Shown one piece after another: positions 3,103-64,000 of a stretch of 64,000 bases of DNA; within the stretch, counting starts at the first letter, position 1, and every line of letters begins with the position of its first letter. The notes beneath the pieces were generated by a model. That model had not been told where the DNA came from. It worked only from the letters and a program-made list of their open reading frames with translations, and searched no databases. Made by a program: the position numbers and the translations under genes. The DNA comes from Hypanus sabinus (taxonomy: Eukaryota). The stretch is from assembly GCF_030144855.1 (NCBI RefSeq), contig NC_082711.1, positions 29,140,001 through 29,204,000 on the forward strand. The letters run 5' to 3'.

Positions 3103-3989
3103 ATGCCCTAGTTCATATTTTTACTGTTATGCTGTGTATATTTCATTTGGTGAAATGTGAGAGCTGCTTGTTTTCAGCTTGGTCCATTTTCAGCTTATGT
3201 TTGGGTTATTGCTGAAGGCAAGAGATGAGGAGAAATATGCACCACCAAATAGGATGCTCAAATTTAAGGGGAGATTTCTCTGGTGAGGGACACTAAGTTT
3301 GAGCTTGGGTCTTTTTGCTTGAGAGGAGATGAAGAGGGACAACGCTGGAGAGAAGAGATCGTAAGCGTCGACCTGGAGTGGGACCGTGATTTGACGAAGC
3401 CCGGGGCAAGATTGACTGAGGATCGGTGTCTTGGAGGAACTGTGAGCTCCAACTTGTGCACATTATACTGTTTCGTTAAAATAGGCCCTGTTCTTTTCTT
3501 TACTAATCTTTTAGTCAAATTAAGAATAACAAAGATAAATCTTTTAATCGTATGCAGTGGGTGGTCTGTTATTTCGTGGCACTAACTTGTAACAGGGTAG
3601 CAAATTACACTGCATCCATACAAACAAGGGGTTTGGGGTGGGATCGCACCTCAGTCTCACAAGTTTGTTGGGGCCAGAGGTTGACTTCCCTAAATTTATG
3701 CAGCCAAGGAAACCAGGGTGCTTCATAATAAAAACACTTTCTTTATAATTTTATGCAGTGTGCGATCTGTTATCTCTTGCCGACTGGCAATTGTGTACGG
3801 GCAGTTTTTGCTCAAATCGAGGTTTCTTTAATTGGAACATCACAGTGTTCCTGTTTGGTTGAACCCCAAATCATACCAACCCTCGACTTATGTTGTTATG
3901 AAAGGTGGCCTTCTCTCTGCTGAGTCATGGCTGTTAGCAGAGCCATCTAAGAAGCCAAGTTAGCATACGAGCCTGGTAAGGGGGCTACA
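3103..3989. mobile_element. probable second LTR-type repeat adjoining the Gypsy 3' LTR
   Basis: Non-coding block ending in GGGGGCTACA, an LTR-like terminus. No TSD or partner end visible in the window. Confidence 0.3.
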
Positions 3990-57731: not shown

Positions 57732-60686
57732 CTATAGTGAAAGAATAATAGAGGGTCATAAAGCAGCTTAATACCAGGTATCTAACCTGCTGTATTTTAT
57801 CTGTACAAATGCAGACTGATCTGCTGTAAATTTGTGTATTTTTCTTCTCATTTGGTTAAGACAAACCAAATAAAATGCATTAAAATTAGTAATGTAGCAA
57901 AAGAATAGTCCCTTGGTGATTTGGACAGGTACCTGATTTAGAGTAACAATGAGCCAAATGTGGGAACAGATGAGTTGGGCTGTACAGCTTGCTGTATGAC
58001 TCTATAGTTGATTGTTTGCTTCCCCGATCACCATCTTTAACCCTTTTCTTCATTTGTTCATATTGACAAAGACAATTCTTTTCTCTTTCATGTACTTATC
58101 TTCTGGAAGTGCATCTATGTCATTGATTTAATTACACCTTGTGGCAGTAAGTTTCACACTATACCACCCTCCAGGTCAAAATGTTTTTTTCCCAATTCTC
58201 CTTTAGACTTACTGATGACCATCTTGCCTCAACTCATTTCCTTTCAGAACTTATCTGGTTTGCTTTTTGCAATTAATAAAATTTGCTATTGCGAAACATG
58301 ATCCAGTTTTTTATAAAATTTCTTAGGCAAGGTTCACTGAGATAATTTTTTTAAACTTATTTTCTTTTGCTTGCCTCATTTCTGTCAGGCTGCATCTCCA
58401 ATTCAGGAATTTTACCTTTTAACGCTATTGCTAGTTATGGCATTCTTGCATACACAATCAGCACAATTTGGATACCCCAAAAGGTACAAGTCCAAAGCAA
58501 CAAGAAAATACATCTCATCAGACTGCAATATTGATGGAGTATCCACATCCTGACCCCGGAACCTGACTGCCAATCCTATCATTAAGTATACCCGTTTCAA
58601 CATGCCTGCCAACAGAAAGATTAATAATTGTGGTGAGTAGACACAAGAAGATAACTAAAAGATTAATGCCACATTCCTGAAAACATCAAAAGCCTGTTTG
58701 CATTTGGTAGTCAGGTTCCTTATCTGTTCTCCTCACCACAGGCCTACTCCTTGTTACCAGTCTAAGACTGAACCAGAACACGACAAATTTGATGCCATAT
58801 TTGACATAGATCTACTTACAGTTTTCTACAGTAGAACAATGCAGTACAGAAACAGGCCTGTTGGCATATCGTGATACAGTAAATGCATTCCAAATATCTT
58901 CTAGATTAAATTATTTCTCAGATTTCCTTTTAATTGTTTTAGTTTAATTTTTGCCATCTTTGTTGTGGGGTTAAGTTTATTACTATCTACTCTATCATGA
59001 TTTTGTATACCTCTATCACCACCCACCCACCACTGCACCTCACCCCCACCTCAGTCTTCTTCACTCCAAGGAAAACATCCATTCTCTCATAATAAGTAAA
59101 GCTCTATCCCTGGTGAATTTTCTTTGCATGCCCACCAAATCGTGTCCTACCAATGATACACAGAAGTTCACTAGTTATTAAAACTACAAATTAAAATTCT
59201 CATCCTTGTTCTTAACACCATCCCCACTTCTGCCCCAAGCTCAAGTTCATCATATTCCCATAAAGAATGGATAGGATTGTCAAATCTAAAGCCCCACGGA
59301 TAACACATTCAGAGGGTAAGACAGGACTGAAAAGGGAAGCCTGTGGCAGACATACACAACCAAAAATATGGAAAAGTACTCAAGTAAAATCCAAAAATGT
59401 TTTAAATTAGAAGGATAAATATAGGAGGCAAAAAGATCACTTAGGTGGAGTGAAGTTCCTACTTCACACACCTGGGCACAATACAAACCAGTCAGTCAAA
59501 AGCAGCAAGGGAGAAGATTGCTGTGTAAATGACCATCAGTTTTCAATCCTCCCTAGCTATATGAGTATTAGAGAACTGCAAATGTTGTATTATTATTTAA
59601 GGGTGGGGGGGGAGAAGCTGATTAATTATAGTCTGGTTAGGTTAATATTGGTAATAAGCTTATGGATTCACCTGTCCTTCACTCCACCCACCATCAGGTT
59701 CAAGCCAGAGCAGGCCAGTAGCAAAAGGCAAACCGAAAATGAAATGCAAAACTGCTGATAGGGACATCTGTGCCAAACAACAAAAATGGCATGTAGTACA
59801 CAGAGCTAAATAATCTCACAACTAATGGAAGTGAAAAAAAGTCTGCAATGAAAACAAAATGTGCTGGTGTTTCTTGTGAAGATCATGCAGAAGGTGTGGA
59901 AAGAAAGTTTCAGATCCCTTGCCGAATCTTCGTAAACTTCTCAAAAAACAGAGGCATTGCTGTGCTTTCTTCGTAATTGCACTTACCATGAATCAGAACA
60001 TTTACAAGGACAGTTGTGTAAAATGGGCCTGTAGGATCATTGGGGACCCAAGTCATCCCAACCACAATCTATTCTAGCTGCTACCAACTGGGAAGTGGTA
60101 CCGCAGCATAAAAGCCAGGACCAACAGGCAATCAGACTGATGAACTCACAATGATTTGAGTGTACTCTATGTTACATTGACTGTCCTATTTATTATAAAT
60201 TACTATGATTGCACATGGCTCGTTTAGATGGAGACGTAATAAAGACTTTTACTCCTCATGTATGTGAAGGATGTAAAAAAATAAAGTCAATTTAATACAT
60301 GCTGAGCCTAGGACAGACCCTCTGAAATTCCTCTAGCCGAGGAATTTAAAGCTGCTGACCTTCTCCACCTCTGATCCCTGATGAGGACTGCTCCAGGACC
60401 TCCAGTTCCCTCCCGAAGTCAATTATCAGCTCTTTGGTCTTGCTGACTTTGAGTGAGAGAATGTTGTTTTGGCACCAGCCAGCCAGATTTTCAAACTATA
60501 TGCCAATTCGTTATCACCTTTGATTTGGCCAATGACAATGGTGTCGTCAGCGAACTTAAGTATGGCATTGATGTTCCAGGATTTAGTGAAGTACCAATGA
60601 ATTGACATCTGCTGTGGACTTGTGCTGGTTGGCAAATTGGTGAGAATCTCAGTCATTTCTTTCTTTAGCCGGCCAGAGGTGTACTG

Positions 60687-61589
60687 CAGGTGTCACCAAC
60701 CTTTTTTGCACCACAGACCGGTTTAATATTAACAATATTCTTGCGGACCAGCCGCTGGGGGGGCGGGGGGGGGATGTTAAACACGACCAGAATACAGCGA
60801 TCCTCCAAGGAGGTTCCTTATGTCCAATCTATTCCACAATTTAGTTTATATGGCTCTCAGCACTTGCTTCTGTCCTGCTTGCTCACGTTTTTTCTGCTCA
60901 AAATACTCAACGGGTTTGTCTTTAAGTGCAGGGTGCTTAGACTCAAGGTACTGAAGCAGTTTTGAGGGCTTCATTGCCTCATTAGACAGCCTCCGGGCCT
61001 GAACTCCAGCTTCCCGCCCGCCCATTGCCAGACGCCTTGGCCAGCTGGTCGTGGGCGGGTGAGAGGTCAAAGTAAGGGCCGGAGGTCCTCGTACCAGGGC
61101 TGCGGCAGTTGTAGTCTGGTGGAGAGAGTGACCAACCGAGTGAGGAGTGCGACAGGGCGCACGCCTGCCCCCCTTGAAGGTCAGTAGGATCTATCGACGG
61201 ACAAAAGTTTGGCTCGAGGGATGACTTTCAGTAGATCACAGCGAGGTAGCTGCCTCTGCTACTTACGAAACCCTGAACCTGAATTAGGTCTGAGAATATT
61301 TAGCACCAGGTTCCTCATGAACATTCGTGCGGTAAACAGGTTTAGAGGCATCTGTCCGCGCTCCAGGCAAGTAGCATCGGCACTTCTCGGCGGCTGCATG
61401 AGGCGGCTGGTTACCCAAGGCCAACCAGTGATCCCTGGTGCGAGGGTATCATTGCGTTTAGGCAACTGATGACTTTGCGTGCATTCAGGTTCAACACTGG
61501 GTGTGACGGAATGAGGAAAGGTGCAGCTGACTCATATCGTTTCATATTCCCAAATCGTATCGTTTCCTCGCGGTGATTGGGGACCACTG
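60687..61589 (-). mobile_element. non-autonomous hAT (Charlie/Buster-like) element with transposase BED-finger fragment and captured rDNA
   Basis: TIRs CAGGTGTCACCAACC / CAGTGGTCCCCAATC. Perfect 8-bp TSD GTGTACTG (60679-86, 61590-97). LSNEAMKPSKLLQYLESKHPALKDKPVEYFEQKKRE is the Buster/ZBED5/SCAND3-type motif. Confidence 0.92.
61200..61490 (-). pseudogene. 28S rRNA 3'-terminal fragment (non-functional) inside the hAT element
   Basis: Minus strand reads GGAACCTGGTGCTAAA..CAGGGTTTCGTAAGTAGCAGAGGCAGCTACCTCGCTGTGATCTACTGAAAGTCATCCCTCGAGCCAAACTTTTGTC, the conserved vertebrate 28S 3' end. Weaker similarity upstream (CTGAATGC..AAGTCA..GCCTAAACG.AATGATACC..GGTTGGCCT). Confidence 0.9.
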
Positions 61590-63269
61590 GTGTACTGGCA
61601 TGAGCACCAGACTTCGAAGCCAATGGCCCAGAGTTCAAATCCAGAGCGCCCCTTGCATGCTTTCCATTGGTGTTAGGTTGAGCATGGAGCTAGCAACTTG
61701 GCCTTGTAACAAAGTCAAAGTGCTACAGAAATGGCAAAATTGCCACCTGATGCTCCAAAGGCATGAAAAGGAACACCAAAGTTGCTTCTCAAGCCAGAGT
61801 TGATATGTTTTATCTCTTCAAGTACTTCACCACAGTGGATGTAAGTGCTACTGGATGGTAGTCATTGAGGCAGGTTATCATGTTCTTCTTAGGCACTGGT
61901 ACAATTAAAGCCTGCTTGTAGAAGGTGGGTACCTCAGACTGCCAAAGCAAGAAGTTGAAGATATTGGTGAACACATCAGCACAGGTATTTAGAAACATAG
62001 AAAATAGATGCAGGAGTAGGCCATTTGGCCCTTCGAGCCTGCACCGCCATTCAATATGATCATGGCTGATCATCCAACTCAGAACCCTGTACCTGCTTTC
62101 GCTCCATACCCCCTGATCCCTTTAGCCACAAGGGCCATATCTAATTCCCTCTTAAATATAGCCAATGAACCAGCCTCAACTGTTTCCTGTGGCAGAGAAT
62201 TCCACAGATTCACCACTCTGTGTGAAGAAGTTTTAGTACTCAGTCAGGTATCTTATTTGGGCTAGATGTTTTCCATGGGTTCACCCTCCTTAAGGATGCT
62301 CTCACATCAGCCTCAGAGACTGAAATCAGAGTGTCTTTGAGGGCTGTGGGAGTTTGTGAAGGTTCCTCCACACTTTGAAAGTCAGAGCAAACATAGAAGG
62401 CATTGAGCTTATCTGGGAGCAAATTCTTTTCGTCACATATGTTTCATGGTTTCACTTTGTAAGAAGTAATAGCATTCAAACCCTGCCACAGCTGACAAGC
62501 ATCTTCAGTTATTCAAGTTTGATCCAGAATTGCCACTTCACCTGTGGGATGGCTTTCCAGAGATCATACCTGGACCTCTTGTATCTTACTTGGTCGCCAA
62601 ACCTAAATGCCATTGATCTGGCCATCAGCAAATTGTGGATCACATGGTTGTTGCAAGACTTCTGATTGGAAAGCCTCTAAATGATTTTGTGGGCACACAC
62701 TCTTCTATGACTATACTTACAGAGTCCTGACAACCATGGTGTATTCATTCAGATCCTGTGATGAGTCCTTCAACATAGTCCAGTCCACCAGCTCAAAGCA
62801 ATCCTGCAGCTGCTGCTCTGAATAGCTGAATATTTGCAGCACTTTCTGTTTCTATTTCAAACTTACAGGGATGACTCCAGGATTGGAACATTTTAGTTGT
62901 GAGAATAAGCCTAGTGTTTTTTTTTCCCCCAAAGGCAAGGACCAAGCGGAGAGAAATGGAGTGTAAACAATTATGAGGGTCAAGATTGTACAAATGGGGA
63001 GGAACCTAATTCCTTTAGCAGAGGGATCTAAATGAGGTATAAATTTAATGCAAAGGGTACAGATATTAGAGGGGAGAGGAAGATTTCTTTGCAATCCAGA
63101 GGATGGTAGGTTCTGGCACTCACTGATTTCATTTTCTGAATGGAAATAAGATAGAAAAACCCCACCACCTTTCAAAGTAAATTGTATTTGTACTTGTGCA
63201 TGATCGAATAAATCAATAAGACAGATATATTCCCAATAAGAAGAAATTTTCGAATGGAAAAAGAACACT

Positions 63270-64000
63270 ACCATGGCTGACAAGTCAGAGCCAAAGTAAA
63301 AGCAATAGAGGGTGCATACAAGAAAGCCAAAGCTAGTGGGAAGATAGAGGATTGCGAAGCTTTTAAAAAGTTGCAGAAGGAAACTAAAAAGGTCATTAGG
63401 AAGGAAAAGATTAAAGAAAGCTGGTTACTAATATCAAAGCAGATACTGAAAGTTTTTTTTTAATTATATAAAGGGCACAGTAGACTTGAGGGTAGATATA
63501 GGACCAATATAAAATGACGCTGGTGATGTTGTAATGAGAGATGCAGAGATGGCAGAGGAACTGAATGCATATTTTGCATCAGTCTTCACAGTGGAAGACA
63601 TCTACAGTATGAAGTATGTGCAGTGAAAATTACAACTGAGAAGGTGCTCAGGAAGCTTAATGGTCTGAGGGTGGATAAGTCTCCTGGAGCTGATGGAATG
63701 CACCCTTGGGTTCTGAAGGAAATAGCTGGAGAGATTGTGGAAGCATTAAAAATAATCTTTCAAGAATTGATAGATTCTGGCATTGTACCGGATGACTGGA
63801 AAATTGCAAATTTTACTCTGCTATTTAAGAAGGGTTGGAGGCAGCAGAAAGGAAACTATAGACCTGTTAGCCTGACATCAGTGGTTGGGAAGTTGCTGGA
63901 ATCAATTGTTAGGGATGAGATTATGGAATACCTGAAGGCACAAGACAAGATAGGCCAAAGCCAGCATGGTTTCCAAAAATGAAAATCCTGCCTGACTAAC
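63270..64000 (+). mobile_element. CR1 ORF2 fragment (runs out of window)
   Basis: DKSPGADGMHP.VLKE..VPDDWKIAN..NYRPVSLTSVVGKLLES..SQHGF. Confidence 0.9.

What the first reader, a model, noticed from the sequence alone, without database searches (positions are those of the whole stretch)
60687..61589. hAT DNA transposon carrying the 3' end of 28S rDNA (Pack-hAT/rDNA chimera)
Seen: a 903-bp unit bounded by imperfect Charlie-type TIRs (11/15 match) and a perfect 8-bp TSD GTGTACTG. On the minus strand it reads TIR, ~290 nt of 28S rRNA ending exactly at the mature 3' end (..CTTTTGTC), ~210 nt of GC-rich sequence, a transposase BED-finger fragment, then the other TIR. Known: 8-bp TSDs mark hAT transposition, and 28S-derived repeats are usually retroposed (SINE-like) rather than carried by cut-and-paste elements. 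Inference: no poly(A) tail or internal TSD is evident around the rRNA piece, and it continues into spacer-like DNA. This suggests capture from rDNA or pre-rRNA and later mobilisation as one unit, so it could be a family dispersing rRNA-derived sequence. Here it sits in an ESYT2 intron in sense orientation.
Basis: partly seen in the sequence, partly recalled or inferred. Interest (0 to 1): 0.8.

Follow-up and report, generated by a model that had tools for sequence, protein, structure and literature searches.

The report
hAT transposon family carrying rDNA piece
This is one old copy of a cut-and-paste (hAT) transposon family, present in thousands of copies, whose interior holds about 500 bp copied from the host's own ribosomal DNA (the end of 28S plus the spacer after it); it is a real and tidy case of host-sequence capture, but a curiosity rather than a new mechanism.

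Summary
Window 60687-61589 is a 903-bp non-autonomous hAT element with an 11/15 TIR match and a perfect 8-bp TSD, GTGTACTG.

On the minus strand it reads:
- the 5' hAT end;
- 289 nt of 28S running to the mature 3' end;
- 210 nt that align colinearly to the host's own 3' external transcribed spacer;
- 47 codons from the N-terminus of a hAT transposase (second half of the BED-type finger plus linker);
- the 3' hAT end.

It is not a one-off. The genome gives at least 4,436 first-look candidates. All 40 scored copies include the rDNA part. Thirteen copies have perfect 8-bp TSDs, all different, with the TcBuster-type nnnTAnnn target.

The 22-copy consensus is about 96% identical to today's rDNA at aligned sites in both the 28S and ETS parts. 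The last 230 nt of 28S are about 99% identical. All parts of the element have decayed equally, so the rDNA was present in the founder.

No poly(A) or internal TSD flanks the rDNA piece. Capture from rDNA followed by trans-mobilisation is well supported. The capture mechanism (gap repair with template switching) is inferred.

A 2024 review lists no DNA transposon with 28S-derived cargo. Dfam and Repbase could not be queried. First readers of this scan noted the same family at two other loci of this genome.

The parts
60679..60686 (.). Left target-site duplication GTGTACTG
   Evidence: Read directly; D3. Identical 8-mer at 61590-61597.
60687..60701 (-). 3' terminal inverted repeat in transposase orientation. 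This copy reads CAGGTGTCACCAACC; the family consensus reads CAGGGGTCACCAACC.
   Evidence: Conserved at the ends of more than 25 copies.
60687..60848 (-). 3' hAT subterminal region (consensus 784-943). It includes a C-run (G-run on the + strand, about 60755-60773) and two GCGGACCGG-like motifs that mirror ACCGGGCCGC motifs at the other end. These are probably transposase-binding sites (inferred).
   Evidence: Consensus of 22 copies. A longer subfamily has 230-360 extra bp here.
60849..60989 (-). Transposase-derived fragment of 47 codons (LSNEAMKPSKLL...QKQVLRAI) followed by a stop at 60846-60848. It covers the second half of the BED-type zinc finger plus linker. The CxxC half and the rest of the transposase are missing.
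   Evidence: phmmer gives 158 hits at E<=1e-3. Long hits carry Dimer_Tnp_hAT, and the match overlaps weak zf-BED hits. The native context CxxC...LSNEAMKPSKLLRHLETKH is seen. Related genomic copies have open frames up to 582 aa.
60990..61199 (-). Segment derived from the host 3' external transcribed spacer. About 210 nt here corresponds to about 281 nt of today's ETS.
   Evidence: Colinear alignment to host rDNA L031. Consensus versus rDNA: 95.8% at aligned sites, 13 gap events.
61200..61488 (-). Last 289 nt of 28S rRNA, ending at the mature 3' end (..CTTTTGTC; final C is the complement of 61200). The first ~25 nt (61464-61488) are scrambled relative to the conserved 28S sequence.
   Evidence: Rfam RF02543 positions 3113-3401/3401. 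Host 28S alignment.
61489..61589 (-). 5' hAT subterminal region and TIR (reverse complement of 61575-61589 is CAGTGGTCCCCAATC; consensus CAGTGGTCCCCAACC). This copy lacks about 40 bp present in most copies. It contains the direct motif repeat TCATATCGTTTC / TCGTATCGTTTC.
   Evidence: (D5).
61590..61597 (.). Right target-site duplication GTGTACTG
   Evidence: Read directly.

Best explanation
The element is an old, inactive copy of a high-copy non-autonomous hAT family of the Buster/Charlie type. The consensus is about 943 bp, and a longer subfamily measures 1.14-1.28 kb.

The family founder was an internally deleted hAT element. It kept both termini and 47 codons of the transposase N-terminus. 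Upstream of that remnant it had acquired about 500 bp copied from the host lineage's own rDNA: the last ~290 nt of 28S, continuing without a break into the first ~280 nt of the 3'ETS.

Shown here: the anatomy, the donor locus, the presence of the cargo in every copy examined, and mobilisation as one unit to thousands of sites with 8-bp nnnTAnnn duplications.

Inferred: (a) the rDNA entered as filler during repair of a double-strand break or gap in a hAT element, with template switching to rDNA, as is known for Ac/Ds and P-element deletion derivatives; (b) copies were moved in trans by a related autonomous element; (c) the cargo has no function and decays neutrally.
For: Mobility.
- TIRs and TSD at the stated coordinates.
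- At least 4,436 first-look candidates. All 40 scored copies align to the query from about position 1-130 onward at 80-84% identity, so all include the rDNA part.
- 13 perfect and 18 near-perfect 8-bp TSDs, all different, with T at position 4 in 17/18 and A at position 5 in 15/18. This equals the TcBuster consensus nnnTAnnn (PMC3499496).

Donor.
- Host rDNA was found and validated.
- The family consensus aligns colinearly across the 28S/ETS boundary. The 28S part is 95.9% identical, with the last 230 nt about 99%. The ETS part is 95.8% identical at aligned sites.
- rDNA homology runs right up to the first transposase codon.
- Rfam places the piece at the very end of the LSU model.

Cargo present at the founding.
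- Divergence from consensus is uniform across hAT ends, 28S, ETS and transposase fragment: non-CpG 4.3-6.0%.
- Deletion derivatives L067, L074 and L075 still keep rDNA remnants.
- The long subfamily also carries the cargo.

Transposase origin and candidate partner.
- The fragment's homologues are 594-669-aa proteins with Dimer_Tnp_hAT.
- C26:105327841-105329481 matches 556 residues of such a protein, with a 582-aa open frame and one stop. It contains a stretch 90% identical to the fragment.

Age.
- Words specific to this copy's junctions are held by runs of two other species labels.
Against: - The capture mechanism is not observable. The 5' junction is scrambled over about 25 nt, and no clear microhomology could be defined, because the autonomous element's sequence could not be fetched.
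- Capture from genomic rDNA versus from a pre-rRNA transcript cannot be told apart.
- I could not verify that the long-ORF relatives carry the same TIRs or that they lack the rDNA piece.
- Only about 40 copies out of thousands were read.
- Pfam does not recognise the short fragment on its own.
Confidence: 0.85

Rival explanations
1. A retroposed pre-rRNA fragment, made by LINE-mediated reverse transcription or template switching (SINE28-like or an L1/rRNA chimera), inserted into a pre-existing hAT deletion derivative. That single nested copy then founded the family.
For: 28S-derived repeats known so far are retroposed (SINE28; review PMC10946416). The 3'ETS is part of the Pol I primary transcript, so an RNA source is possible. 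The founder event was single and old, so its signatures could have eroded.
Against: The consensus shows no A-rich tail, no LINE tail and no direct repeats flanking the rDNA piece. The piece ends in GC-rich ETS directly abutting the first transposase codon. It extends about 280 nt past the mature 3' end, so it is not from mature rRNA.
Confidence: 0.06
2. The hAT lineage once resided in rDNA, as Pokey does in Daphnia. Two elements or element fragments flanking the 28S-end/ETS segment transposed together as a composite. Alternatively, an aberrant event used an outside end. The intervening rDNA was thereby trapped.
For: The only described DNA transposon with rDNA-derived internal sequence, Pokey, lives in rDNA (PMC3849761). 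The rDNA piece sits between a complete 5' end and a 5'-truncated transposase, which a two-element composite could produce.
Against: The six rDNA units read (L031-L036) show no hAT termini within 1.5 kb of the 28S end; only consensus positions 155-617 match. No internal TIRs lie at the rDNA borders. The TSDs show ordinary dispersed nnnTAnnn targets, not an rDNA site.
Confidence: 0.07
3. A one-off secondary event or chance similarity: only this copy carries rRNA-like sequence, or the similarity to 28S is spurious.
For: The first Rfam scan of 6 kb around the element found nothing.
Against: Rfam hits the piece when it is given alone. It aligns over about 500 bp to the host rDNA. All 40 scored copies include the segment.
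Confidence: 0.01

Closest known systems
Pack-type or transduplicating DNA transposons: Pack-MULEs in plants, and hAT elements that captured histone H3 in Dothideomycete fungi (PMC6710886)
   Same: A non-autonomous or deleted cut-and-paste element with intact TIRs carries a fragment copied from a host locus. It amplifies that fragment to many copies, each with its own TSD. The donor locus stays in place.
   Different: The cargo here is non-coding rDNA (28S 3' end plus 3'ETS), not a protein-coding gene fragment. The host is an animal with a 4-Gb genome. The copy number is in the thousands rather than tens to hundreds.
Pokey / mPok (piggyBac superfamily, Daphnia): the only DNA transposon listed with rDNA-derived sequence in the 2024 review PMC10946416, Table 2
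   Same: A cut-and-paste transposon, with MITE derivatives, that has rDNA-derived sequence upstream of the transposase region.
   Different: Pokey's cargo is IGS subrepeats, not 28S or ETS. Pokey targets a specific TTAA site in 28S and lives in rDNA. Here the superfamily is hAT, the targets are dispersed nnnTAnnn sites, and no copy was seen in the rDNA units read.
SINE28 (mammals): the only 28S-derived TE in the same review table
   Same: It disperses a 28S-derived sequence through the genome.
   Different: SINE28 is a retroposon moved through RNA. Here the rRNA piece runs on into the spacer, has no tail, lies between hAT TIRs and moved by cut-and-paste with 8-bp TSDs.
Buster/Charlie-type hAT transposons (TcBuster, vertebrate Charlie elements, ZBED5-like genes)
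   Same: 8-bp TSD with central TA (PMC3499496). TIRs begin CAG. The N-terminal CxxC...MKPSKLxRHLExKH finger context is seen in homologues. Homologues carry the hAT dimerisation domain.
   Different: This element is a roughly 0.9-kb deletion derivative with only 47 transposase codons. Its clade assignment rests on target preference and a short motif, not on a transposase phylogeny.

Membership tests
hAT superfamily, non-autonomous element | 8-bp target-site duplication, different at each insertion | tested here: met
   13 perfect 8/8 TSDs and 18 at >=7/8, all different. The window copy has GTGTACTG on both sides.
hAT superfamily, non-autonomous element | Short terminal inverted repeats of the hAT type (begin CAG / YARNG) | tested here: met
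   Consensus CAGGGGTCACCAACC versus CAGTGGTCCCCAACC, 13/15; 11/15 in this copy.
hAT superfamily, non-autonomous element | Internal sequence derived from a hAT transposase gene | tested here: met
   The 47-aa fragment hits proteins of 594-669 aa that carry PF05699 Dimer_Tnp_hAT. A genomic relative covers residues 26-581 of one of them.
hAT superfamily, non-autonomous element | An autonomous partner with the same termini | tested here: inconclusive
   The candidate at C26:105327841-105329481 has a 582-aa open frame with 1 stop and is 90% identical to the fragment.
Buster/Charlie clade of hAT | Target consensus nnnTAnnn | tested here: met
   T4 in 17/18 and A5 in 15/18. TcBuster consensus cited from PMC3499496.
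Buster/Charlie clade of hAT | Transposase groups with Buster in a phylogeny | not tested
   Only a 47-aa remnant is present. There is a weak DUF4371 hit in one homologue. Thirty DUF4371-bearing loci of this genome are unrelated to the fragment.
Pack-type (transduplicating) DNA transposon | Internal fragment copied from an identifiable host locus, lying between the TIRs | tested here: met
   Colinear alignment of about 500 bp to the host rDNA across the 28S/3'ETS boundary.
Pack-type (transduplicating) DNA transposon | The captured fragment is shared by multiple transposed copies | tested here: met
   All 40 scored copies include the rDNA part. Decay is uniform in all parts.
SINE28-like / retroposed rRNA repeat | A-rich 3' tail and flanking direct repeats around the rRNA piece; source is mature rRNA | tested here: not met
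   No tail or internal TSD in the consensus. The piece continues about 280 nt into the 3'ETS.
Pokey-like rDNA-resident DNA transposon | Site-specific insertion in rDNA | tested here: not met
   Diverse genomic targets. No hAT termini in six rDNA units read. Only about 3 kb per unit was examined.

The most novel reading that the evidence does not exclude
The rDNA cargo was not a passive passenger. One version: the parent hAT lineage lived in or targeted rDNA when the capture happened, making it a second, vertebrate 'Pokey-like' case. Another version: the 28S-end/3'ETS module, which holds pre-rRNA 3'-processing and possibly Pol I termination signals, helped this derivative out-amplify its siblings, or now affects the thousands of host transcripts that carry it in introns. 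Nothing here supports this beyond the family's success. Nothing excludes it either.
Probability: 0.06. Interest if true: 0.7.

Novelty: new member of a known kind. Interest (0 to 1): 0.4.

Why it matters
Biological interest.
- It adds a clean animal example of host-sequence capture by a cut-and-paste transposon, with the donor locus identified to the base.
- Judged by a 2024 review (PMC10946416, Table 2), it is the first DNA transposon reported with 28S and ETS cargo. The known cases are Pokey with IGS repeats and the retroposon SINE28.

Practical consequences of several thousand dispersed copies of the 28S 3' end.
- Repeat maskers will label them 'rRNA'.
- They can inflate rDNA copy-number estimates based on read depth at the 28S 3' end.
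- rRNA filters can remove intronic reads.
- They could add background to 28S probes.

Dating.
- The captured ETS is a snapshot of a fast-evolving spacer at the time of capture. It differs from today's ETS by about 4% plus 13 indels, so it could help date the burst.

Tried and rejected
- Genome search with Rfam RF02543 failed twice with machine errors. I replaced it with a pattern search for the sarcin-ricin loop region and validated a hit with Rfam.
- The Rfam 'evalue' scan of 58000-64000 found nothing. The same piece given alone scored 26.6 bits, E 1e-4. An embedded fragment of a long model is evidently missed.
- Pfam on the 50-aa fragment and on its consensus found no family.
- Thirty DUF4371 (Buster-like) loci were fetched as candidate autonomous partners. 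None is related to this family at the DNA or protein level.
I did not try to obtain those letters another way.
I therefore have no read-level check of orthologous presence or of expression.
- ARAGORN found no tRNA-like gene in the flanks.
- Seven literature searches found no description of a hAT with 28S cargo.
- The ESYT2 identity of the host gene and a downstream exon were not established.
- Chance similarity and a one-off secondary insertion were considered and rejected (see rival explanations).

Full report
**1. What is at the coordinates**

Reading 60400-61900 shows the 8-mer GTGTACTG at 60679-60686 and again at 61590-61597. The element between them starts with CAGGTGTCACCAACC. Its far end, read as the reverse complement, is CAGTGGTCCCCAATC, so the TIRs match 11/15. 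The repeat finder reports the same flanking direct repeat (D3).

**2. It is a family that moved by hAT transposition**

A search of the window's own 4.04-Gb assembly with the 903 bp gave 4,436 first-look candidates. The tool calls this a lower bound. All 40 scored copies were 80-84% identical to the query and aligned from about position 1-130 onward, so they include the rDNA part.

After orienting 30 fetched loci, most copies measure 915-960 bp. The window copy lacks about 40 bp near one end. A majority consensus of 22 copies is 943 bp, with TIRs CAGTGGTCCCCAACC and CAGGGGTCACCAACC matching 13/15. Copies are 7-11% from that consensus.

Among 34 delimited copies, 13 have perfect 8-bp TSDs and 18 match at 7/8 or better. 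All are different. Position 4 is T in 17/18 and position 5 is A in 15/18. This nnnTAnnn target is the one reported for TcBuster (PMC3499496). It points to the Buster/Charlie side of the hAT superfamily.

**3. The interior really is host rDNA, and it crosses the 28S/spacer boundary**

I located the host rDNA with a conserved 28S pattern. It gave 136 hits in arrays with 18-25-kb spacing. Rfam confirmed one unit, L031, as LSU rRNA at 1612 bits, ending at model position 3401.

The minus strand of the element aligns colinearly to that unit. The alignment starts about 300 nt before the 28S 3' end and runs on into the spacer. With the family consensus the picture sharpens:
- The 28S part is 95.9% identical overall, and the last 230 nt are about 99% identical.
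- The 3'ETS part is 95.8% identical at aligned sites, with 13 gap events.
- ETS homology continues right up to the first transposase codon, so there is no separate 'filler'.

In window coordinates, 28S is 61200-61488 and the 3'ETS is 60990-61199.

Rfam independently places 61201-61495 (minus strand) at model positions 3113-3401 of 3401, with E 1e-4. It does so only when the piece is given alone. Embedded in 6 kb, the piece is missed.

The spacer evolves fast, so its close match to this genome's own ETS shows that the capture happened in this host lineage. The first ~25 nt of the 28S piece (61464-61488) differ from an otherwise invariant 28S stretch, so the 5' junction was scrambled at or after capture.

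**4. The transposase remnant**

60849-60989 on the minus strand encodes 47 residues (LSNEAMKPSKLL...QKQVLRAI) followed by a stop. Pfam does not see a fragment this short.

A full HMMER search against 1.84 billion proteins found 158 hits at E<=1e-3. The long hits (594-669 aa) carry the hAT C-terminal dimerisation domain. In several of them the matched stretch overlaps the C-terminal half of a weak zf-BED or Spin-doc finger hit. Short hits show the native context: CxxC, a few residues, then LSNEAMKPSKLLRHLETKH.

The element therefore keeps the second half of the finger and about 25 residues of linker, and has lost the CxxC half.

**5. A likely source of transposase**

A genome search with the fragment gave 3,191 candidates. 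One class matches only residues 4-51, which excludes the three residues translated from ETS, and has longer open frames. The best of these, at C26:105329257-105329400, lies inside C26:105327841-105329481. That stretch matches residues 26-581 of a 610-aa hAT transposase at E 1e-120, with a 582-aa open frame and one stop. Copies at C31:56727020 and C33:85320138 behave the same way.

These are plausible decayed autonomous relatives.

**6. The cargo was there from the start and decays neutrally**

Divergence from the consensus is the same in every part: hAT ends, 28S, ETS and transposase remnant. Non-CpG sites show 4.3-6.0% in each.

Internally deleted copies (L067, L074, L075) still keep rDNA remnants. 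A longer subfamily (L017, L027, L029, L030) has 230-360 extra bp of 3' subterminal repeats and also carries the rDNA.

The six rDNA units I read contain no hAT termini. They are the donor, not copies of the element.

**7. Age**

Copies are about 8-9% from the consensus. A 75-nt stretch made only of words specific to this copy covers its private deletion and its insertion junction. Runs of the probable source species hold it, and runs of two other coded species labels hold 4 of its 5 sampled words. This is weak evidence, but it fits an insertion older than those species splits.

**8. How it most likely arose and works**

Shown: a chimeric unit that was mobilised intact to thousands of sites.

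Inferred from established knowledge of Ac/Ds and P-element deletion derivatives: a hAT element suffered an internal deletion during double-strand-break or gap repair. The repair polymerase switched template to rDNA and copied the 28S end and adjacent ETS. The product kept both termini, so a related transposase could move it in trans.

The consensus has no A-rich tail, no LINE tail and no direct repeats around the rDNA piece. The piece also runs about 280 nt beyond the mature 3' end. This argues against retroposition of rRNA, although a pre-rRNA template cannot be strictly excluded. A composite of two hATs resident in rDNA is a second rival. It finds no support in the rDNA units read.

**9. Gene context**

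SMP-domain exons (C24:29251218-29303396) and C2 exons (29245473-29245652 and 29207637-29207753) of an E-Syt-family gene lie on the minus strand just beyond the window's high end. The window probably holds the 3' part of that gene, and the element's rRNA-sense strand matches the gene strand. I did not establish which paralogue it is, and I did not find an exon downstream of the element.

**10. Comparison with what is known**

Capture of host sequence by DNA transposons is well known. Examples are Pack-MULEs and the hAT capture of histone H3 in fungi (PMC6710886).

A 2024 review of rDNA-TE relations lists only Pokey/mPok (piggyBac, IGS repeats) as a DNA transposon with rDNA-derived sequence. It lists only the retroposon SINE28 as 28S-derived (PMC10946416). 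Seven full-text searches found no hAT with 28S cargo. Dfam and Repbase could not be consulted.

First readers of this scan flagged the same kind of element at two other loci of this genome. That fits the copy number and is not independent evidence.

**11. Verdict**

It is a new family of a known kind (a transduplicating non-autonomous hAT) with an unusual cargo. Interest is moderate. It is a neat, fully traceable capture with practical consequences for rRNA annotation and filtering, but there is no sign of a new mechanism or function.

Noticed in passing
G000 rDNA: C17:346185-421389, C283, C285, C388, C488 and many small contigs; single hits at C28:167633220, C37:83600691, C38:80683873, C42:65548332, C80:4854930: The 28S pattern gives 136 hits. 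Array units vary in spacing from about 17.6 to 25.7 kb. Several hits stand alone inside large chromosomes, possibly as orphan rDNA units or fragments.
   Followed up: no
L009 (C87:13179965), L011 (C16:83128221), L024 (C17:150978880): Three copies on different contigs share both flanks (..ataatgtat.. on one side, aagtacac.gtgtagtgcgtggtggggg on the other). One copy apparently sits inside another repeat or duplicated segment that was itself multiplied.
   Followed up: no
G000:C38:62909433-62911193, C37:63440691-63442451, C24:138785587-138787350, C24:17851927-17853696: Other Buster-like hAT transposase genes have uninterrupted open frames of 600-658 aa. They could be recently active elements or domesticated genes. 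They are only 38-45% identical to the query protein.
   Followed up: no
L027, L029, L030, L017 (consensus position about 813-835): The long subfamily (1.14-1.28 kb) has 230-360 extra bp that include an internal duplication of about 100 bp rich in ACTTATAAGTGACTTATA motifs. These are probably more of the parent element's 3' subterminal repeats.
   Followed up: partly
window 58000-64000 versus 61195-61495: Method note. cmscan with permissive filters missed the 290-nt 28S fragment when it was embedded in 6 kb and found it when the stretch was given alone. Embedded rRNA fragments elsewhere may be missed in the same way.
   Followed up: yes
window 61545-61619: Words specific to this insertion are held by runs of coded organisms C and D as well as A. 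The flank 61590-63400 is held at 0.2-0.5 share by eight organism labels. This suggests a slowly evolving or species-rich clade with many sequenced relatives.
   Followed up: partly
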